From the IMG/VR virus record IMGVR_UViG_3300028558_000016, positions 248,001 to 312,000 of that record: a stretch of DNA of 64,000 nt; one strand, written 5' to 3'. Both the position numbers and the translations under genes were made by a program. Positions 55,353 to 64,000 of the stretch are shown in pieces (position 1 is the first letter of the stretch; the number at the start of each line of letters is the position of its first letter). A model generated the notes under the pieces. The model worked only from the letters and a program-made list of their open reading frames with translations. It did not search any database and had not been told where the DNA came from.

Positions 55353-56801
55353 ATGGCAACAAAATCATCAACAATGTCCGGCGAGGACATTAAAAAAACA
55401 GCGATCGATAAAGGATTAAAGGTCGCAATACTCGTATGTGTGTCAGATGACAACAATAACAAGTATTTCAATATGTACGAACAAGGAGATGGAACTTACA
55501 TGGTAATCCGCGGAAGAGTGGACGTTACCGAAATAATCGAAGGTCCATACCCAATGTCAAAATGGGATGTTCATTACAAGGACAAAACAAAAGCAAACAA
55601 AAAACCAAAACCTTACACTGATCAAACTCATTTGTTCTCTGAACAAAAGAAAAGCGATGGTGCAGGAAAGAAAAAAGAAAAATCATCGAACTTCCATTCA
55701 AAGAGAACTGCAATGGTAATTGATTTCGTGAAACAACTTCAAAAATTCGCAAATCAATCGGTAGAAGAAAACTACACGGTATCAGCCGCAAACGTTACTA
55801 AGAAGCAAGTTGATTTCGCTCAACAAACTTTAAATCAAATTAGCGACATGGTTAAGAAAGGCGCAGAGGTTGGTCCAATCAATGACAAACTAATGGAGCT
55901 TTATCAAATCATTCCTCGTCGTATGAAACATGTGAATAACCACCTCATCATTACAGATGAAATGGAAAAAACACTTGGTAAAGTTGAGAAGACCGACAAA
56001 GAAAAAATGAAAGAGGCGAAAGCTAAAACATATTCAATGAAGATTAAATCTGATGCCGAGTTACAAAAAGCGCATGACATGATTGCCGGTGAGCAAGATA
56101 CTCTTGACGTTATGGCAGGTCAGGTTGCTGTTGAAGAACAGGAAAAGAAAGATCACGTTGAAACCCCAGGTGCTAAAAAAGAATACGATTTATTGCACGC
56201 AATGAAACTTGATATGGAAGATTGCGATAAGTATGAAATTGCAATGCTTAAGAATATGCTTGATCAAAACGCTAAAGCCGGCCACGAAAAGAATTCAAAC
56301 CTTTTCAAACGTGCATATCGCGTTAAGAACGATAGCACTGAAGTTGCTTACAACAATTTCATGGGTAAAGTTAAAAACAAGAAGAAGGAATTATTGTGGC
56401 ATGGAAGTCGCAATGAAAACTGGTGGAGCATTTTCCAACAAGGTTTAGTTCTTCGTCCTACCAATGCAGTAATCACCGGTAAGATGTTTGGTTACGGATT
56501 ATATTTCGCTGACAAGGCGCAAAAATCCATAAACTACTCTTCTTATTCTGGAGCATCACGCTCTTACACAGGGGGTTCATCAAGGAATGCAATTCTTGCG
56601 GTATATGAAGTTCACCAAGGAGATCAATTGGTAATTAAACGTCATGAGCACTCACACTCACAATTGACTGATAAACAAATGGAAAAACACGGTAAAGATT
56701 CTGTGTTCGCTCAAGGCGGTTATGACCTTGTGAATAACGAATACATTGTGTACAAGCAACAACAATGTACTATAAAATATCTTGTTGAAATTGGGAACTA
56801 A
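55353..56801 (+). CDS. Poly(ADP-ribose) polymerase-like protein (WGR-like, regulatory and catalytic domains)
   Basis: NNKYFNM...IRGRV; LMELYQIIPR; LLWHGSR, GKMFGYGLYFADKAQKSINY, NEYIVY (H-Y-E triad). Confidence 0.9.
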   Translation: MATKSSTMSGEDIKKTAIDKGLKVAILVCVSDDNNNKYFNMYEQGDGTYMVIRGRVDVTEIIEGPYPMSKWDVHYKDKTKANKKPKPYTDQTHLFSEQKKSDGAGKKKEKSSNFHSKRTAMVIDFVKQLQKFANQSVEENYTVSAANVTKKQVDFAQQTLNQISDMVKKGAEVGPINDKLMELYQIIPRRMKHVNNHLIITDEMEKTLGKVEKTDKEKMKEAKAKTYSMKIKSDAELQKAHDMIAGEQDTLDVMAGQVAVEEQEKKDHVETPGAKKEYDLLHAMKLDMEDCDKYEIAMLKNMLDQNAKAGHEKNSNLFKRAYRVKNDSTEVAYNNFMGKVKNKKKELLWHGSRNENWWSIFQQGLVLRPTNAVITGKMFGYGLYFADKAQKSINYSSYSGASRSYTGGSSRNAILAVYEVHQGDQLVIKRHEHSHSQLTDKQMEKHGKDSVFAQGGYDLVNNEYIVYKQQQCTIKYLVEIGN

Positions 56802-58830: not shown

Positions 58831-58884
58831 GAAAACGGTAAACCCATGGTTGCCATGGTTGGTTGTCCTTTGGGTATTATCGTG

Positions 58885-58913
58885 AAAGGGTGGGAGGAAA
58901 CTTCCACCCTTTT
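58885..58913 (+). terminator. Intrinsic terminator
   Basis: aaagggtgg...gaaa...ccacccttt. Confidence 0.75.
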
Positions 58914-58963
58914 AATTTTCCATGACTTTAAGAAGTATATAGCTTTAAATAACCAACACAGTC

Positions 58964-59230: not shown

Positions 59231-59259
59231 TTGTTTTATTTTTATTAAAAGTGTAAGAG

Positions 59260-59290
59260 TCCAGGCCCCGTAAGGCCTGGATTTCTTATT
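59260..59290 (+). terminator. Intrinsic terminator
   Basis: tccaggcc-ccgtaa-ggcctgga followed by a T-rich run. Confidence 0.75.
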
Positions 59291-59327: not shown

Positions 59328-60485
59328 ATGCAGATACCTAAAGACATAGCAGAAATTCAACAAAAATTCATCGCCGCTGGAAAAGAAATTTTCCTCGTTG
59401 GTGGATGTGTTCGTGATTTCAAGCTTGGTCTTGAGCCCAAAGATTTGGACATGGCAACCAATGCCTTTCCAGAAGAAATTGAAACCATCCTCAAAGGAGT
59501 TGAGATGGACCTTACAGGCAAAAGTTTTGGAGTCATGCGGGTTCGCAGTGAGTTCGATCCAAACGGATACGAAATTGCCACATACAGAGAAGATGAGAGT
59601 GCTGGAAGAAAACCGACCGTAAAGATCGGATCAACCATGGAAAACGATGCGTGGAGAAGAGACTTCACGATCAACGCTCTTTACTATGATATTTCCAACA
59701 AGACTATAATTGATCACACTGGCGGGCTCAATGATTTAGAAAACAAAATCATTCGTGCTTGTGGCGATCCTGCGAAAAGAATTAACGATGATGCTTTGAG
59801 AATGCTTAGGGCAGTTCGTTTCAAAAATACTATTGGTGGAACTATTGATGTTGACTTGCATAATGCAATGTTGGCCAATCCTGTTTTACAAGGTCCAGAC
59901 AAAGATGGAAATATAGTACCAATATCACAGGAGAGAATAGCTGAGGAATTCCTTAAAGGTCTTTCCAAAAGCTACAACATGGATCTCGTTGACCAATATG
60001 TGAAAGATTTAATGACATACCAATTTCTTGGACAAGTGTTCAGAGGACTTCACGTAAATGATAATTTTACATGCAACTCAAGAAAGCCTGAGATAATGAT
60101 TGCGGATCTTTTACGTTTTAATACGAATCACAAGGATTTATTTAATAAGCTTGTTTATGATTGCAAATTCAGTATTGATATTGCCGAAGGAGTTATTTTT
60201 CTTTTGAGCCTTGAAGATATTGATGAGGACAAAGTGTACAAGCTAAGAAAAAGAATGGACAGCAAAACCAAATTAAATAAGGATGATCTTATTATTTATT
60301 CAGGTTTAATGGTAGAGAATGGAATGATTGGAAGAGTTGCTTATGTACATGCATTCACTAAATATTCCATAACAACAAGCGGAGATGAATTAAAAGAAAA
60401 GGAAGGATTTGTTGATGGAGCAGAACTTGGAGCAGAGATAGCAAAAAGAGAGAAAAACAATTTTTTAAAAATATTTACACAATGA
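59328..60485 (+). CDS. cca: Class II CCA-adding tRNA nucleotidyltransferase / poly(A) polymerase family
   Basis: VGGCVRD...KDLDMAT; EIATYR; DAWRRDFTINAL; DDALRMLRAVRF; ERI..E. Confidence 0.85.
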   Translation: MQIPKDIAEIQQKFIAAGKEIFLVGGCVRDFKLGLEPKDLDMATNAFPEEIETILKGVEMDLTGKSFGVMRVRSEFDPNGYEIATYREDESAGRKPTVKIGSTMENDAWRRDFTINALYYDISNKTIIDHTGGLNDLENKIIRACGDPAKRINDDALRMLRAVRFKNTIGGTIDVDLHNAMLANPVLQGPDKDGNIVPISQERIAEEFLKGLSKSYNMDLVDQYVKDLMTYQFLGQVFRGLHVNDNFTCNSRKPEIMIADLLRFNTNHKDLFNKLVYDCKFSIDIAEGVIFLLSLEDIDEDKVYKLRKRMDSKTKLNKDDLIIYSGLMVENGMIGRVAYVHAFTKYSITTSGDELKEKEGFVDGAELGAEIAKREKNNFLKIFTQ

Positions 60486-61174
60486 ACGAATCAAAAGACT
60501 TAAAAAGTTTAATAGCATCCTTGCAGGAAGGAAGCGAGTTTTGTGATTTCATGATAACAAAGCTTCTTCACATGGATGGGTCCACCGATGCCGATCTTAA
60601 AAAAGATTACAGAAAACTCTTTAAAGAAGGAGGAGCTGATGCTTTTAAAGATGACATGAAAAATGGAAAGAAATTAAAGTATACAGAAGAAGAGCTTGAA
60701 ATGATCGAGGAAAAAATAAATGAAATTTTTCCAGAAGGTCATGAGCCACTCACAACAACAATGATACCATTCGGTTTTTATCTTGGACAATTATTAAGAA
60801 AGAAGATACCAGGTGCTGAATGGAAAGTGACAGATGAGGTTAACAAGAAAAACAGTATATGGGATGTCTTTATTGAATTTAAAAATTCTGACGGATATAC
60901 CATGCAGGCTAAACCGTTCATGCGCGTTGATAAATTTTGGAGAAGGAGAGAAGATAAGATGTCAGCATTCGTTAAGATGATTGAAATGACATCTGAAATT
61001 AAAATGGATCCTGAGTATTGGAATAAACGCGCAGATGATGAAGGTTGGATTGAAACCGCTAACGAAATGTCGTTCAGGGTTTTTCAAGGAAGCAAGAAAG
61101 ATAAAATAGATGGAGATTTCTCTAAAGCAAAGGGAATGTTTCATAACGGAAAATTTGGAGATGGAAAATATTAA
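60482..61174 (+). CDS. Hypothetical protein (weakly DUF3806-like)
   Basis: FGFYLGQLL...GAEW motif; ATGA-coupled. Confidence 0.5.
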   Translation: MNESKDLKSLIASLQEGSEFCDFMITKLLHMDGSTDADLKKDYRKLFKEGGADAFKDDMKNGKKLKYTEEELEMIEEKINEIFPEGHEPLTTTMIPFGFYLGQLLRKKIPGAEWKVTDEVNKKNSIWDVFIEFKNSDGYTMQAKPFMRVDKFWRRREDKMSAFVKMIEMTSEIKMDPEYWNKRADDEGWIETANEMSFRVFQGSKKDKIDGDFSKAKGMFHNGKFGDGKY

Positions 61175-62501
61175 TAAAATAAAAGACATACACTCGAGTG
61201 ATGCCTATGGAATTCTGGTAGAGACTGGATGTGGTCTTGCGGTATCTAATGAATTGCTTGAAGTCAGCGGTGCATCTAATACGGTTTATTTTGCTGAATG
61301 TCCATACAGCAAGGAATATCAAACATTCAAGTATGGCGAAACCAATGCGAGAGCGGTTTCAATGGAAAACATAAAGCACATAATGAATTATCATAAAGCT
61401 TTAGATAAACCAGAAAACGTTAACTTCATTTATGCTTCATCCTTTCAAGTAGGAGAACACAACGATAAATCAACTCATGGATGGATAGGTCTTTCATTAA
61501 AAGAAGATGACAGACGTTATTTCCACATCTCAATACATGAGTCATTAACACGAAAACAATACATCGATAAAATATCTAAGATAGGAATTGACATTTTACA
61601 TTTTTACATAAACAAATCAACTGGTACAAATTTCATACCGAGCAATTGTTGCATTGACATAGTACTTAATGGAAAAGGTGAACAGGTCAATTTAACTGAT
61701 ATGTTTGTTTCTCTTAGATATGAAGACGATGAAAACTTCTTATGCTTCAAAGAAGGAAAATTAGTTAGAATGGAAGATCTTTTCAGAGATCAAAAGAACA
61801 TAGTATTATTCAAGGGAAGCTTTAATCCAATCCATGCCGCTCACATACACACTGCACAATTAGCAAAGGATGAATATGGAATTGAACCTGTGTTTGTTAT
61901 TAGTTCTTCAGTGTATCAAAAAGGATGGATAGAACCTGAGGATCTTAAGAACCGAGTGGAAACATTAAACGAACTTGGCTATCCTGTTATAATAACTAAA
62001 GATGGTTACTTTAACAAGAACACGTCCTATATTAGACGTAAATTCAAACAACCTTTGATATACGTAGTTGGTTCGGATACATTAAACAGAATATTGGAAA
62101 GCTCATATAACATTTTAAATCCAGAACTTAGCGAGAGATATAATCATTACGTCAATCAATTGATTTCCATGAAGCCTGAGAATGAACTGATAACAGACGA
62201 AGAATTGGATGAAATAGAAAAAATGGCATTACAACATTATTTAAGAAGATTCAAAGAGGATTTCAAAGATGTAAAATTCTTCGTTGTAAATAGACCAGGG
62301 AGCGAATTGCACGAAGATGCAAAACGAATAGAAGAATTTTATTCAATGGTTGAAGAACATCCTGAGTATTTCCATATAAGCTCAACTAAAATTCGTGCCA
62401 TGCTTATAGCTGGAGATTATGAGACAATTAAAAAATTGATACCAGAAAAAATATTTGAAAAGTATATTAACCAAAAAACAAACAACCATGTCAACAACTA
62501 A
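61161..62501 (+). CDS. CinA-like domain fused to an NMNAT-like (HxGH-class) nucleotidyltransferase
   Basis: N-terminal ETGCG...LL.VSGASNTV...PYS; C-terminal FKGSFNPIHAAH, VVGSDT..R, F.V..R, ISSTKIR. Confidence 0.75.
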   Translation: MENINKIKDIHSSDAYGILVETGCGLAVSNELLEVSGASNTVYFAECPYSKEYQTFKYGETNARAVSMENIKHIMNYHKALDKPENVNFIYASSFQVGEHNDKSTHGWIGLSLKEDDRRYFHISIHESLTRKQYIDKISKIGIDILHFYINKSTGTNFIPSNCCIDIVLNGKGEQVNLTDMFVSLRYEDDENFLCFKEGKLVRMEDLFRDQKNIVLFKGSFNPIHAAHIHTAQLAKDEYGIEPVFVISSSVYQKGWIEPEDLKNRVETLNELGYPVIITKDGYFNKNTSYIRRKFKQPLIYVVGSDTLNRILESSYNILNPELSERYNHYVNQLISMKPENELITDEELDEIEKMALQHYLRRFKEDFKDVKFFVVNRPGSELHEDAKRIEEFYSMVEEHPEYFHISSTKIRAMLIAGDYETIKKLIPEKIFEKYINQKTNNHVNN

Positions 62502-62787
62502 AACAAAAAAGTCAAAGAAAGAAAAAATTGAAATCAACAACTTCACAATCCATCGTTCGATGGGAGAGAGTTTTGATTGGAAAAAACTCGATCTTAAAAA
62601 GAAACACATTGAAGCTCTTAATGAAATAGGAAATTCAGGAAAGTTAAAAGGCAAAAAAATAACCATCAGCGAATACTTTGAAAGGTATCTTAATGGAAAA
62701 GGTCTTAAACACGAAGTGACATCTATGAAATCCAATAACATGGAATTTACAGACACGCTTTTAATAACAAGAGTTAAAGTAAATTAA
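62488..62787 (+). CDS. Hypothetical protein
   Basis: Start moved to ATG 62488. Confidence 0.55.
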   Translation: MSTTKTKKSKKEKIEINNFTIHRSMGESFDWKKLDLKKKHIEALNEIGNSGKLKGKKITISEYFERYLNGKGLKHEVTSMKSNNMEFTDTLLITRVKVN

Positions 62788-62797
62788 AAATTAAAAC

Positions 62798-63157
62798 ATG
62801 GCAGCTTTTTACATATTGTTAGGAGTTATGTGTGGAGTAGTTGGAATTTTCATATTCGGTTATTATGCTTCAAAGAAGGATAACAAAAAATTTGATGCAA
62901 CCGAAACAATGAATAAAACTGTAACTGAAAGCTCAGGCCCAATTTGGCCTGAGCCTGGTTACATGAGCGAACCTATATGGCAATCAACAAGGATTGAAAC
63001 AACGTTCGTCAATGCTGGAAAAGGTTCAGAAAAAAAGTCAGACAAGAATGCAAAAGAAAAACCTCTTGAAGACCAATTGAAAGAAGCTCTTGAAAATGAA
63101 TGGTACGAAAAGGCTGCAGAAATTAGAGATAAAATTAATAACGCTAAAACCAAATAA
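62798..63157 (+). CDS. Membrane-anchored protein with a C-terminal UVR (UvrB/UvrC/ClpC) motif
   Basis: N-terminal TM; LEDQLKEALENEWYEKAAEIRDKI. Confidence 0.7.
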   Translation: MAAFYILLGVMCGVVGIFIFGYYASKKDNKKFDATETMNKTVTESSGPIWPEPGYMSEPIWQSTRIETTFVNAGKGSEKKSDKNAKEKPLEDQLKEALENEWYEKAAEIRDKINNAKTK

Positions 63158-64000
63158 ATGTATAACATAAAATACCCGGTCGCATTCCACCCAGTGGATA
63201 TGGCCATAACAAGAATACACGAAGGAAGAATACAAGTTCTCCTTGCGCAAAAAGTAAAAGACACAGAAGGTGGAGCTAACATTGTTAGATTCCCTGGAGG
63301 TTTCCTTGATGTGTGTGACTCGTGTGCTGAAGAAGCAGCATTGAGAGAAGCAATGGAAGAAACAGGAATGAGATTTGGAAACTCTGCTATGGCAGATTAT
63401 TTCATCGGATACTTTGCTAAGAAGAAACCATTTACCGATAAGTTGAACAAACTTATAGAATCAAACGGTGATGCAAAGGAAATAACTGAAACCATCAACC
63501 AATTGCATGCAATCAAAATATCCGATGATGCTTTAGCATGGTTGAGAACAAGAACAACTTACATTGGTTCAACTAAGATTGATGATGCAAGATATGCTGA
63601 CACAGATCACAAAGTAATCACAAGCTTTTATGAGCTACATCCAAATCCAAAATTCGATAAGGATGGTGAAGGTCCATTTGATGACATCGCAAGAACAAAA
63701 TGGTTTTTCCTTTCAGACATTAAAGAAGAAATCATGCACAAGTCGCATGTTCCATTGTTCAACATGTTATTTGAAAAATACAAAGCAGAGAGACTTGCAG
63801 ACAACGTGTTTAACGCTGCTGAAGAGGTATTCAAATCAACAGAGGAAATGTTCAACACCTTCAAAAAAGAAACTGATGAGATTTTTGATGGAATAAAAAA
63901 GAAAATGCCTGAATACGAAAAGAAAGTGGATGAAGCAATGCAAGGCATGGGAAAGAAAATGGATAAGTTCTTTAGCGGTTTAGAAGATATTTTAAAATCT
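63158..64000 (+). CDS. Nudix hydrolase (ADP-ribose pyrophosphatase-like), running off the window end; not in the ORF track
   Basis: RFPGGFLDVCDSCAEEAALREAMEETG Nudix box; later DDARY and DDIARTKW; frame open to 64000. Confidence 0.85.
   Translation, partial: MYNIKYPVAFHPVDMAITRIHEGRIQVLLAQKVKDTEGGANIVRFPGGFLDVCDSCAEEAALREAMEETGMRFGNSAMADYFIGYFAKKKPFTDKLNKLIESNGDAKEITETINQLHAIKISDDALAWLRTRTTYIGSTKIDDARYADTDHKVITSFYELHPNPKFDKDGEGPFDDIARTKWFFLSDIKEEIMHKSHVPLFNMLFEKYKAERLADNVFNAAEEVFKSTEEMFNTFKKETDEIFDGIKKKMPEYEKKVDEAMQGMGKKMDKFFSGLEDILKS

What the first reader, a model, noticed from the sequence alone, without database searches (positions are those of the whole stretch)
61161..64000. CinA-NMNAT-like fusion plus Nudix: an NAD supply/recycling arm matching the ART arsenal
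Seen: a CinA-like domain fused to a GSFNPIH..H nucleotidyltransferase, and two genes later a Nudix hydrolase with an insert of about 60 aa after the Nudix box. Established: NMNAT makes NAD from NMN, CinA/PncC acts on NMN, NadM-type Nudix enzymes cleave ADP-ribose, and phages encode NAD-reconstitution pathways against NAD-depleting defences (Thoeris, DSR, SIR2). Inference: a variant NAD-restoration route, also feeding about six NAD-consuming ART/PARP domains in this window. The CinA motif (ETGCG) is non-canonical and may be inactive.
Basis: partly seen in the sequence, partly recalled or inferred. Interest (0 to 1): 0.65.

Follow-up and report, generated by a model that had tools for sequence, protein, structure and literature searches.

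The report
Phage NAD-rebuilding genes with pseudo-deamidase
A 482-kb phage carries a gene cluster for rebuilding the cofactor NAD, a known phage strategy, but its NAD-making enzyme is fused to a strongly conserved, undescribed relative of NMN deamidase that has lost that enzyme's catalytic residues.

Summary
Window 61161-62501 encodes a 446-aa protein. Its N-half has the CinA/PncC fold (Z 14-16.5). Its C-half has the NadD/NMNAT fold (Z 13-15.6) and carries the GSFNPIHAAH and ISSTKIR motifs. Two small genes later lies a 281-aa Nudix protein with an intact REAMEE core and a three-helix insert of about 60 aa.

A NAMPT gene starts 300 bp past the window end. Elsewhere the genome holds PRPP synthetase, NadE and a second NMNAT-like gene.

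The order fusion, Nudix, NAMPT recurs in three diverged phage contigs (31-57% identity). This is a NARP2-type NAD-salvage module, which is a known kind.

The new part is the CinA-like domain. In 199 family members the catalytic Ser position is variable and the catalytic Lys is never present. The phosphate-binding Ser/Tyr/Arg are kept, and E21, Q96, H106, H122 and D166 are near-invariant. It is therefore not a canonical NMN deamidase, but it is not a decayed domain either. The family has 971 representative clusters and no match in 50,697 deposited phage genomes.

Only one PARP domain could be verified, not six. The Nudix substrate is inferred, not shown.

The parts
61161..62501 (+). Fusion gene, 446 aa: CinA/PncC-like domain, a short beta/alpha linker, then a NadD/NMNAT-like adenylyltransferase. 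An alternative ATG lies at 61110.
   Evidence: ORF. 78 full-length homologues. AF2 pLDDT 94 and pTM 0.91. Fold matches.
61161..61628 (+). CinA/PncC-fold domain (residues 1-156). The catalytic Ser/Lys dyad is lost. Phosphate-binding S39, Y49 and R131 are kept. E21, G23, Q96, H106, G107 and H122 are invariant or nearly so.
   Evidence: Z 14-16.5 against 5vu3, 6l19, 5v01, 2a9s, 6mr3 and 5kvk. hhalign E 2.8e-4. Column counts.
61221..61235 (+). ETGCG, aligned with the ESCTGG block P-I of CinA. T22 sits where the catalytic Ser is.
   Evidence: Residue roles from PMC5384747.
61302..61322 (+). PYSKEYQ, aligned with the YSNExK block P-III of CinA. Y49 is kept. Q54 sits where the catalytic Lys is.
61629..61787 (+). 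Linker/subdomain (residues 157-209) with the near-invariant D166 (CIDIV, 61650-61664). No template covers it.
   Evidence: Secondary structure. Template ranges. D166 is present in 177 of 184 aligned members.
61788..62498 (+). NadD/NMNAT-like HIGH-superfamily adenylyltransferase domain (residues 210-446). It has GSFNPIHAAH (61815-61844) and ISSTKIR (62376-62396), plus a helical insertion at about residues 315-370.
   Evidence: PF01467 E 1.3e-10. TIGR00482 scores 50.6 bits, below the cut-off of 112. Z 13-15.6 against NadD/NMNAT structures.
62455..62787 (+). Small ORF of 110 aa with unknown function. A gene of similar size sits in the same place in L009.
62798..63157 (+). Small protein of 119 aa with an N-terminal hydrophobic segment and a C-terminal UvrB/UvrC (UVR) motif. 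Its position between the fusion and the Nudix gene is conserved.
   Evidence: PF02151 E 3.7e-7. Synteny in L009 and L011.
63158..64000 (+). Nudix hydrolase, 281 aa (stop codon at 64001-64003, just outside the window). The Nudix box is at 63296-63370 with the REAMEE core at 63344-63361.
   Evidence: PF00293 E 4.3e-8. AF2 pLDDT 82.5. Foldseek top hit is the NrtR Nudix domain with ADP-ribose, 3gz8. Z 13-14.6 against many Nudix enzymes.
63374..63553 (+). Three-helix insert of about 60 aa directly after the Nudix box (residues about 73-132).
   Evidence: Helices 76-101, 106-118 and 123-132 at pLDDT above 90. Present in 27 of 29 homologues and absent from P0106 and P0107.
63782..64000 (+). C-terminal tail of two long helices (residues 209-280). 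It varies in length and is missing in some homologues.
59328..60485 (+). PolyA_pol-head protein resembling a tRNA nucleotidyltransferase (CCA-adding enzyme). It is conserved immediately upstream in three related contigs.
   Evidence: PF01743 E 1.1e-32 and phrog_2244 E 1.5e-51. Synteny.
60482..61174 (+). Protein of 230 aa with unknown function. It overlaps both neighbouring genes, and a gene of 178-195 aa sits in the same place in L009, L010 and L011.
   Evidence: The Atlas gives only weak leads to DUF6278/YwmA-like clusters.
55353..56801 (+). 482-aa protein with a C-terminal PARP catalytic domain. It is the only ART/PARP domain verified in the window. A PARP gene also lies upstream of the module in L009 and L011.
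   Evidence: PF00644 E 4.6e-26. Synteny.

Best explanation
The region is the upstream half of a co-directional NAD-salvage (NARP2-type) module of a 482-kb phage. Its gene order is PolyA_pol-like, unknown, CinA-like/NadD-like fusion, two small genes, Nudix, a 91-aa gene, NAMPT.

Proposed mechanism:
1. The Nudix enzyme splits ADP-ribose, the product of NAD-cleaving defences and of the phage's own PARP, into AMP and ribose-5-phosphate.
2. The phage PRPP synthetase, encoded elsewhere in the genome, makes PRPP.
3. NAMPT joins PRPP and nicotinamide to give NMN.
4. The NadD-like domain of the fusion adenylylates NMN to NAD.
5. The CinA-like domain is not a canonical NMN deamidase, because its Ser/Lys dyad is gone. 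It keeps the mononucleotide phosphate-binding residues. Most likely it binds NMN or a related pyridine nucleotide and hands it to, or regulates, the rigidly attached transferase.

What is shown: the folds, the motifs, loss of the dyad, the family's conservation pattern, the gene content and the conserved synteny. What is inferred: every substrate and activity, the counter-defence role, and the binding role of the CinA-like domain.
For: Folds and motifs.

Loss of the dyad: 32 of 32 true CinA domains have Ser and Lys at the catalytic positions. In 199 members of this family the Ser position reads T65/I30/M30/V19/A16/S10/L10/C9/N8, and the Lys position is Q104/F28/S19 and others, with no K.

Kept residues: S39 in 191, Y49 in 199 and R131 in 192 of 199. 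These align with S48, Y58 and R145 of AtCinA, which bind the NMN phosphate (PMC5384747).

Domain packing: pTM 0.91 for the two-domain model implies a fixed packing of the domains.

Genome content: NAMPT at genome 312301-314094, with PF18127 at 112 bits and PF04095 at 103 bits. Prs with TIGR01251 at 195 bits against a cut-off of 113.

Synteny: fusion-(UVR)-Nudix-NAMPT in L009 (57% identity), L011 (36%) and L044 (31%). In L046 the order is fusion-Nudix, with Prs 5 kb downstream and an NAD-dependent ligase upstream.

Nudix: REAMEE is intact. The best family and structure hits are the ADPR-binding NrtR, and JGI labels some homologues COG1051-type ADPR pyrophosphatase.

Bacterial copies: in two Sericytochromatia MAGs the fusion is the best hit to the NadD model, and no canonical NadD passes the cut-off.

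Precedent: KVP40 Nampt plus Nmnat form NARP2 (bioRxiv 10.1101/2024.02.11.579819). NadM is an NMNAT fused to a Nudix domain (PMC9503650).
Against: No activity was measured.

The transferase scores far below the NadD equivalog cut-offs (50.6 against 112 bits). NadD-type enzymes in bacteria usually prefer NaMN, so use of NMN is an assumption from context.

The genome has a second NMNAT-like gene next to NadE. That gene could be the true NMN adenylyltransferase.

Fold matches for the Nudix tie across MutT, DR1025, NrtR and ADPRase at Z 13-14.6. CoA pyrophosphatase models also hit weakly.

A purely binding role does not obviously explain the invariant residues E21, Q96, H106, H122 and D166.

The fusion also occurs without NAD neighbours in L010, L045 and the Sericytochromatia MAGs.

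The strict linkage to a CCA-adding-like gene is unexplained.
Confidence: 0.62

Rival explanations
1. The fusion is an active two-step enzyme. The CinA-like domain deamidates NMN to NaMN by a non-canonical mechanism, for example one based on His/Asp/Glu or a metal. The NadD-like domain then makes NaAD, and the phage NadE finishes NAD. This would be a phage copy of the bacterial PncC-NadD-NadE recycling branch fed by NAMPT.
For: The phage encodes NadE (TIGR00552 at 100 bits against a cut-off of 64). The transferase is of the NadD type, and bacterial enzymes of that type typically prefer NaMN (own knowledge). The CinA substrate-binding residues are retained. E21, H106, H122, Q96 and D166 are invariant or nearly so across 199 members, which looks catalytic or metal-binding. 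This phage has Thr at the Ser position.
Against: The Ser position is hydrophobic in about half of the family, and the Lys is never present. S31A and K63A abolish activity in AtCinA (PMC5384747). NadE lies 57 kb away, beside a different NMNAT-like gene.
Confidence: 0.18
2. The module serves RNA metabolism rather than the NAD pool. The transferase and the Nudix would act with the CCA-adding-like enzyme, the NYN nuclease, RlaP, NADAR and the RNA ligase. Possible roles are making or removing NAD caps or other adenylylated RNA ends, or tRNA repair.
For: The order PolyA_pol-like, gene of about 190 aa, fusion is conserved in L009, L010 and L011, even where NAMPT is absent. NYN, RlaP, NADAR, a tRNA array, an aaRS-like gene and an RNA ligase lie within 12 kb downstream. 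The Nudix also weakly matches RppH and YtkD models.
Against: The closest structures and family models for the transferase are all NaMN/NMN adenylyltransferases, and both signature motifs are present. Direct adjacency to NAMPT recurs in three contigs. Phage NAD genes are known to sit among early RNA-repair genes (PMC9503650).
Confidence: 0.1
3. The CinA-like domain is a decayed, functionless remnant, and the Nudix protein is a non-catalytic NrtR-like ADPR sensor.
For: The catalytic dyad is lost. The best structural neighbour of the Nudix is NrtR, a regulator.
Against: Nine or more positions are invariant or nearly so across 199 diverged members, and the family has 971 representative clusters. 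Both argue for strong purifying selection. The Nudix keeps REAMEE, lacks a winged-helix domain, and has invariant E58, E64, E67 and E68.
Confidence: 0.05

Closest known systems
NARP2 / the Vibrio phage KVP40 NadV (Nampt) and NatV (NMNAT-Nudix) salvage pathway
   Same: It uses a NAMPT plus an NMN-adenylyltransferase candidate plus a Nudix enzyme, encoded together by a large phage. The expected chemistry is the same: nicotinamide plus PRPP gives NMN, which gives NAD, with ADPR recycled through ribose-5-phosphate.
   Different: The transferase here is NadD-like, not NadM- or NadR-like. It has no tblastn match in 50,697 deposited phage genomes. The Nudix is a separate gene with a helical insert rather than a fused domain. 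An extra CinA-like domain is fused to the transferase. The phage also has its own Prs, NadE and a second NMNAT-like gene.
CinA/PncC NMN deamidase (PF02464), e.g. E. coli PncC, A. tumefaciens CinA (2A9S) and the C-domain of T. thermophilus CinA (4CT8)
   Same: It has the same fold (Z 14-16.5). The alignable blocks are E-x-x-x-G, G-A/S-S, Y-S-x-E, (G/R)AVS and the C-terminal Arg. The phosphate-binding Ser, Tyr and Arg are conserved.
   Different: There is no Pfam match. The catalytic Ser is replaced by variable residues, often hydrophobic. The catalytic Lys is replaced by Gln, Phe or others in 199 of 199 members. New invariant residues are Q96, H106, H122 and D166. The domain is fused to an adenylyltransferase instead of standing alone or being fused to a COG1058 ADPR pyrophosphatase.
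Bacterial NadD (NaMN adenylyltransferase) and the eukaryotic NMNATs
   Same: It has the Rossmann-like HIGH-nucleotidyltransferase fold (Z 13-15.6, 19-26% identity), an H-x-x-H motif and an ISSTxxR motif.
   Different: It scores below all equivalog cut-offs. The motif reads HxAH rather than HxGH. It has a helical insertion of about 55 aa and an N-terminal extension of 210 aa. Its substrate preference is unknown.
The NrtR / COG1051 ADPR-binding Nudix clade, including the Nudix domain of NadM-Nudix
   Same: This clade gives the best family and Foldseek hits. The conserved downstream motifs (IDDxRYRDxxHKVIT and GEGPFDDxARTKWF) resemble, from memory, the RDxRG and GDDA motifs of that clade. It is genomically linked to an NMNAT, as in NadM-Nudix.
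   Different: It has a 60-aa three-helix insert after the Nudix box, a helical tail of about 70 aa, and one extra residue in the first half of the Nudix box. It has no DNA-binding domain.
'NAD-jumbo phages' (Microbiome 2024, PMC11662467)
   Same: These are jumbo phages with NAMPT, nadD, nadE and NAD-consuming enzymes clustered in their genomes.
   Different: That paper does not mention any CinA/PncC-like domain (0 occurrences). The present fusion family is not described there.

Membership tests
CinA/PncC NMN deamidase (PF02464) | CinA C-terminal domain fold | tested here: met
   VIA-align Z 14-16.5, rmsd 2.3-2.7 A, 140-150 residues aligned. Foldseek probability 1.0.
CinA/PncC NMN deamidase (PF02464) | Match to the family HMM above the gathering score | tested here: not met
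   No hit in hmmscan. No hit in the whole genome at E<=10. The domain profile finds no CinA chain in the PDB. hhalign reaches only E 2.8e-4 and probability 41%.
CinA/PncC NMN deamidase (PF02464) | Catalytic Ser/Lys dyad (S31 and K63 in AtCinA, S29 and K61 in EcPncC) | tested here: not met
   The Ser position is T in this protein and variable in the family. The Lys position is Q here and is K in 0 of 199 members. The reference set of 32 CinA domains has both in 32 of 32.
CinA/PncC NMN deamidase (PF02464) | NMN phosphate-binding residues (S48, Y58 and R145 in AtCinA) | tested here: met
   S39, Y49 and R131 align to them and are conserved in 191, 199 and 192 of 199 members. This rests on alignment only, with no ligand modelling.
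CinA/PncC NMN deamidase (PF02464) | NMN deamidase activity | not testable with these tools
   An enzyme assay is needed.
NadD/NMNAT pyridine-mononucleotide adenylyltransferase | HIGH-superfamily nucleotidyltransferase fold closest to NadD/NMNAT | tested here: met
   Z 13-15.6 against more than 40 NadD/NMNAT entries. PF01467 E 1.3e-10.
NadD/NMNAT pyridine-mononucleotide adenylyltransferase | (H/T)xxH and ISSTxxR signature motifs | tested here: met
   GSFNPIHAAH at residues 219-228 and ISSTKIR at residues 406-412. H228, S407, S408, T409 and R412 are conserved in the family.
NadD/NMNAT pyridine-mononucleotide adenylyltransferase | Score above the NCBIfam equivalog cut-off | tested here: not met
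   TIGR00482 scores 50.6 bits against a cut-off of 112.45. All other NadD models are also far below their cut-offs.
NadD/NMNAT pyridine-mononucleotide adenylyltransferase | Adenylylation of NMN or NaMN, and which of the two is preferred | not testable with these tools
   An enzyme assay is needed. Context (adjacent NAMPT) suggests NMN.
Nudix hydrolase | Nudix fold and the REUXEEXGU catalytic helix | tested here: met
   Z 13-14.6 against many Nudix enzymes. REAMEETGM is present, and E64, E67 and E68 are invariant.
Nudix hydrolase | Canonical spacing GX5EX7 in the first half of the box | tested here: not met
   GGFLDVCDSCAEEAALRE has one extra residue relative to B. subtilis RppH in the HMMER alignment. 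No Glu stands at the canonical position by my reading.
ADP-ribose pyrophosphatase / NrtR-type (COG1051) Nudix | Closest relatives bind or cleave ADPR | tested here: inconclusive
   NrtR is the top hit in NCBIfam (E 7.8e-5), in the PDB sequence search and in Foldseek. VIA-align ties it with MutT, DR1025 and CTP pyrophosphohydrolase, and CoA pyrophosphatase models hit at similar weak E-values.
NARP2 (phage Nampt + Nmnat) | Nampt homologue encoded by the phage | tested here: met
   597-aa ORF at genome 312301-314094. PF18127 scores 112 bits and PF04095 103 bits. NF006629 scores 399 bits, just under its cut-off of 405. It is 32-35% identical to annotated phage NAMPTs.
NARP2 (phage Nampt + Nmnat) | Nmnat homologue of the KVP40 (NadM-Nudix) type in the same genome | tested here: not met
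   Neither NMNAT-like protein of this phage matches a deposited phage NMNAT by tblastn. Both are NadD-like by NCBIfam.
NARP2 (phage Nampt + Nmnat) | Restores NAD and overcomes NAD-depleting defence | not testable with these tools
   Infection assays are needed.
NARP1 (Adps + Namat operon) | Prs-like Adps gene adjacent to the NAMPT-like gene | tested here: not met
   The only Prs-like gene (genome 76957-77988, minus strand) lies 235 kb from the NAMPT gene. Whether it is Prs or Adps was not resolved.

The most novel reading that the evidence does not exclude
The CinA-like domain would be a new enzyme, not a binding module. It would have a His/His/Asp/Glu, possibly metal-dependent, active site built on the PncC scaffold and would act on a pyridine nucleotide. 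One example is an alternative NMN deamidase, which would make the fusion a channelled NMN to NaAD enzyme that feeds the phage NadE. Another is a different NAD-related hydrolysis. This would define a large, unrecognised enzyme family (971 representative clusters) in phages and some bacteria.
Probability: 0.2. Interest if true: 0.7.

Novelty: new variant of a known kind. Interest (0 to 1): 0.5.

Why it matters
Phage NAD reconstitution (NARP1-3) is a current topic in phage-bacterium conflict. Published surveys list NadV, NadM and NadR as the phage enzymes (PMC9503650).

This locus shows a fourth adenylyltransferase solution. It is a NadD-like enzyme permanently fused to a PncC-derived domain. It pairs with a separate Nudix gene and NAMPT in several diverged large phages. 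It is invisible to Pfam-based CinA annotation and absent from deposited phage genomes.

If the domain captures NMN, it would be an example of a pseudo-enzyme recruited as a substrate-handling module. It could plausibly keep NMN away from the host's own PncC. If the domain is catalytic, it is a new amidohydrolase-like family.

The genome also combines NAMPT, Prs, NadE, two NMNAT-like genes, PARP, NADAR and two Nudix genes. That makes it a compact test case for how a phage runs both the amidated and the deamidated NAD branches.

Tried and rejected
- Pfam, NCBIfam and PHROGs scans of the N-domain gave nothing.
- PF02464 found nothing in the whole genome at E<=10.
- The N-domain profile against PDB sequences found nothing at E<=10.
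- hhalign against E. coli PncC alone, or against a shallow 5-sequence profile, gave only 1% probability. A 32-sequence CinA profile was needed.
- My third word-based protein search, with E. coli PncC as query, returned only sequences 93-99% identical to the query. It was useless for a profile.
- The genome-contig scan with the family alignment used a single narrow peptide pattern and found only two Sericytochromatia MAGs. This says little about the bacterial range. The Atlas hints at fusions of about 475 aa in Verrucomicrobiota and Bacteroidota.
- megablast and tblastn of the fusion against deposited phages gave no match.
- phmmer of PARP, the fusion and the Nudix against all 1,570 ORFs of the genome found no paralogues.
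- Searches for further ART domains (PF01129, PF03496, and the Pfam and PHROG tallies over 55 ORFs) found only the one PARP. Divergent ARTs and ORFs under 120 aa were not excluded.
- Nampt versus Namat and Prs versus Adps could not be resolved.
- Model coordinates are not exposed. I therefore could not test whether E21, H106, H122 and D166 cluster in space.
- The read tools (look-up of sequencing runs, read laying) and complex prediction were not used.
- No alternative genetic code was used.
- A weak second PARP-like stretch with two TAA stops (genome 365896-366087) was left as it is.

Full report
WHERE AND WHAT. The window is bases 248001-312000 of a 482,156-bp virus record that CheckV rates as complete. 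GC content is about 34-41%. At the finding's coordinates there is a run of tightly packed + strand genes:
- 59328-60485, a PolyA_pol-head protein resembling a tRNA nucleotidyltransferase (PF01743 E 1e-32; phrog_2244 E 1.5e-51).
- 60482-61174, an unknown protein of 230 aa.
- 61161-62501, the fusion gene.
- 62455-62787, an ORF of 110 aa.
- 62798-63157, a 119-aa protein with a hydrophobic N-terminus and a UVR motif.
- 63158-64003, the Nudix gene.
Two strong terminator-like hairpins lie at 58883-58914 and 59257-59284, just before this run.

OBSERVATION. The likely start codon is 61161. The 90%-identical homologue P0001 is also 446 aa, and the other homologues begin at the same position. The Nudix ORF is complete at 281 aa, and only its stop codon falls outside the window.

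THE FUSION PROTEIN. Family models see only the C-half. PF01467 gives E 1.3e-10. The best NCBIfam model is NadD TIGR00482 at 50.6 bits, against a cut-off of 112. PDB sequence hits are all NadD, and they are weak.

An AF2 model built on 45 homologues is confident, with pLDDT 94 and pTM 0.91. VIA-align places residues 1-156 on CinA/PncC structures (5vu3, 6l19, 5v01, 2a9s, 6mr3, 5kvk, 4ct8). The scores are Z 14-16.5, rmsd 2.3-2.7 A, 140-150 residues aligned and 8-16% identity. It places residues 210-443 on NadD/NMNAT structures at Z 13-15.6 and 19-26% identity.

IS THE CinA-LIKE DOMAIN A DEAMIDASE? Mutagenesis of A. tumefaciens CinA shows that S31 and K63 are essential. It also shows that S48, Y58 and R145 hold the NMN phosphate (PMC5384747).

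I built a reference profile from 32 bona fide CinA domains: E. coli PncC and YdeJ plus 30 domains found with PF02464 in one phylum. I aligned it to the N-domain profile. The result was E 2.8e-4, probability 41% and 150 columns. The register is the same as in the weaker single-sequence alignments:
- E21 aligns with the conserved Glu.
- T22 aligns with the catalytic Ser.
- S39 aligns with S48.
- Y49 aligns with Y58.
- Q54 aligns with the catalytic Lys.
- S94 aligns with T105.
- R131 aligns with R145.

In the 32 true CinA domains, Ser and Lys are present in 32 of 32. I compared 199 members of the phage-type family: 78 from the word search plus 121 representatives from the exhaustive search. At the Ser position they read T65, I30, M30, V19, A16, S10, L10, C9, N8. 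At the Lys position they read Q104, F28, S19, V11 and others, and never K. The canonical mechanism is therefore absent from the family as a whole.

The domain is nevertheless far from decayed. E21, G23, Y49, H106 and G107 are invariant (199 of 199). Q96 and H122 are present in 198 of 199. S39 and R131 are present in more than 190. D166, in the family-specific linker, is present in 177 of 184 aligned members.

My reading is that the nucleotide-phosphate pocket is retained and the chemistry is either lost or replaced. I could not check whether the new His, His, Asp and Glu residues cluster, because model coordinates are not exposed.

THE FAMILY.
- The word search found 78 full-length homologues. 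All come from metagenomes or MAGs.
- The exhaustive profile search with the N-domain found 971 representative clusters at E<=1e-3 and 330 at E<=1e-10.
- Of the 199 members I held, 181 are 300-500 aa long, and 167 carry both transferase motifs. The fusion is therefore the normal architecture.
- There is no match among 50,697 deposited phage genomes.
- Two Sericytochromatia MAGs carry it. In both it is the best hit to the NadD model, and no canonical NadD passes the cut-off. This fits a genuine pyridine-nucleotide adenylyltransferase, but the completeness of these MAGs is unknown.
- The Atlas points to structurally similar 'NadD family' clusters of about 475 aa in Verrucomicrobiota and Bacteroidota, and to a cluster that partly carries PF02464.

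THE NUDIX PROTEIN. PF00293 matches only residues 20-72, because a three-helix insert (76-101, 106-118, 123-132; pLDDT above 90) interrupts the fold. The rest of the fold resumes at residue 134.

The insert is present in 27 of 29 homologues and absent from the two shortest. Nudix genes next to more distant fusions are only 167-201 aa. The insert is therefore a feature of one subclade. The C-terminal 70 residues form two long helices of variable length.

REAMEETGM is intact, and E58, E64, E67 and E68 are invariant. The first half of the box has one extra residue.

The nearest relatives by HMM and by Foldseek are the ADPR-binding NrtR Nudix domain (3gz8 and 3gz5; NF050029, E 7.8e-5), the TRPM2/NUDT9 domains and ADPR pyrophosphatases. 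VIA-align ties these with MutT-like enzymes at Z 13-14.6, and CoA pyrophosphatase models also hit weakly. ADPR hydrolysis is the best guess. It rests mainly on context and on the analogy with NadM-Nudix fusions.

CONTEXT BEYOND THE WINDOW. Downstream of the window the genome encodes:
- a 91-aa acidic protein;
- a 597-aa NAMPT at genome 312301-314094 (PF18127 and PF04095; NF006629 at 399 bits);
- a NYN nuclease and a RlaP-type nucleotidyltransferase;
- a second, RppH-like Nudix and a NADAR protein;
- a phosphatidylserine decarboxylase;
- seven tRNA genes, a class-I aaRS-like protein and an RNA ligase.
Elsewhere in the genome there are:
- a PRPP synthetase (TIGR01251, 195 bits);
- NadE (TIGR00552, 100 bits);
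- two genes after NadE, a second NMNAT-like protein of 489 aa. Its C-terminal part contains a motif resembling a PRPP-binding site (my reading).

CONSERVED SYNTENY.
- L009 (57% identity) has PARP ... PolyA_pol, gene of 194 aa, fusion, 96-aa gene, UVR gene, Nudix, 90-aa gene, NAMPT, NYN.
- L011 (36% identity) has the same order with small changes.
- L044 (31% identity) has fusion, Nudix, NAMPT directly adjacent, with an NrtR-like regulator upstream.
- L046 (39% identity) has an NAD-dependent DNA ligase, fusion and Nudix, then Prs and another CTP_transf_like gene.
- L010 keeps only PolyA_pol, the unknown gene and the fusion.
- L045 and the bacterial loci show no NAD neighbours.
The fusion-Nudix pair is the conserved core, and NAMPT is its frequent third member.

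INTERPRETATION. This is a NARP2-type salvage module: NAMPT makes NMN and an adenylyltransferase makes NAD (bioRxiv 10.1101/2024.02.11.579819). A Nudix enzyme and the phage's own Prs plausibly close the loop from ADPR. Jumbo phages with NAMPT, nadD and nadE have been catalogued (PMC11662467). A broad survey lists NadV, NadM and NadR as the phage enzymes (PMC9503650). Neither paper mentions a CinA/PncC-like domain.

The main rival is that the N-domain is a non-canonical deamidase and that the fusion feeds the phage NadE. A second rival ties the module to RNA-end chemistry, because of its strict linkage to a CCA-adding-like gene.

THE 'ART ARSENAL'. Only one PARP catalytic domain (window 55353-56801) could be verified. 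It is syntenic with the module in L009 and L011. The link between NAD supply and an NAD consumer is therefore real, but the count of six is not supported by the models I tried.

VERDICT. The new element is a large, unannotated family of fusions between a PncC-derived domain and a NadD-like enzyme, whose N-domain function is open.

Noticed in passing
L002 6301-8094 (genome 312301-314094; 300 bp past the window end): A 597-aa NAMPT gene (NAMPT_N plus NAPRTase domains). It is about 100 aa longer than typical phage NAMPTs and 32-35% identical to them. A conserved 91-aa acidic ORF (L002 6007-6282) precedes it.
   Followed up: partly
L013 5023-8423 (genome 369023-372423): A second NAD cluster: NadE, a 2OG-Fe(II) oxygenase-like protein and a 489-aa NMNAT-like protein. 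The C-terminal part of the last one contains a motif resembling a PRPP-binding site (FDDDIHSGST) and matches only a hypothetical protein of Acinetobacter phage ME3.
   Followed up: partly
L012 3957-4988, minus strand (genome 76957-77988): A phage-encoded ribose-phosphate diphosphokinase (Prs-like, TIGR01251 at 195 bits), 235 kb from the NAMPT gene. I did not resolve whether it is a true Prs or an Adps-like ADPR-PP synthetase.
   Followed up: partly
window 59328-61174: A CCA-adding-like PolyA_pol gene and an overlapping unknown gene of 230 aa. Both are conserved immediately upstream of the fusion in L009, L010 and L011, even where NAMPT and Nudix are not adjacent. The reason for this linkage is unexplained.
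   Followed up: partly
L002 8096-12044 and 14589-17394: An RNA-repair and translation set interleaved with the NAD genes. It includes a NYN nuclease, a RlaP-type nucleotidyltransferase, an RppH-like Nudix, NADAR, seven tRNA genes (Leu and Ser), a 487-aa class-I aaRS-like protein and an RNA ligase.
   Followed up: partly
window 58883-58914 and 59257-59284: Two strong terminator-like hairpins (14 and 11 base pairs, each followed by a T-run) just upstream of the PolyA_pol gene. They suggest that a transcription unit starts there.
   Followed up: no
window 1-58000 (members not located individually): Four collagen-repeat proteins resembling tail fibres (best E 2e-63). There are also topoisomerase VI A- and B-like domains (Topo-VIb_trans, TP6A_N, Toprim), a family-B DNA polymerase, RecA, DnaJ and a SiaC-like protein.
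   Followed up: no
L013 2031-4275: A full-length IF3 homologue (IF3_N plus IF3_C) and a protein with a histone-deacetylase domain, both encoded by the phage. A class-II aaRS-like ORF lies at L013 549-1451.
   Followed up: no
genome 365896-366087 (outside the window): A weak second PARP-like stretch (E 0.006) that contains two TAA stops. It may be a decayed fragment. I left it as it is.
   Followed up: no
L007 6001-7173 and L008 6001-7167 (Sericytochromatia MAGs): Bacterial copies of the fusion at 36-38% identity. They sit between a DUF433 gene and a UvrD-like helicase. They are the best NadD-model hits in these genomes, and one of the MAGs has a NAMPT elsewhere.
   Followed up: partly
L044 3941-4612: In a related phage contig, an NrtR-like protein (Nudix plus WHD_NrtR winged helix) lies 2.4 kb upstream of fusion-Nudix-NAMPT. 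This hints at ADPR-responsive regulation of the module in some phages.
   Followed up: no
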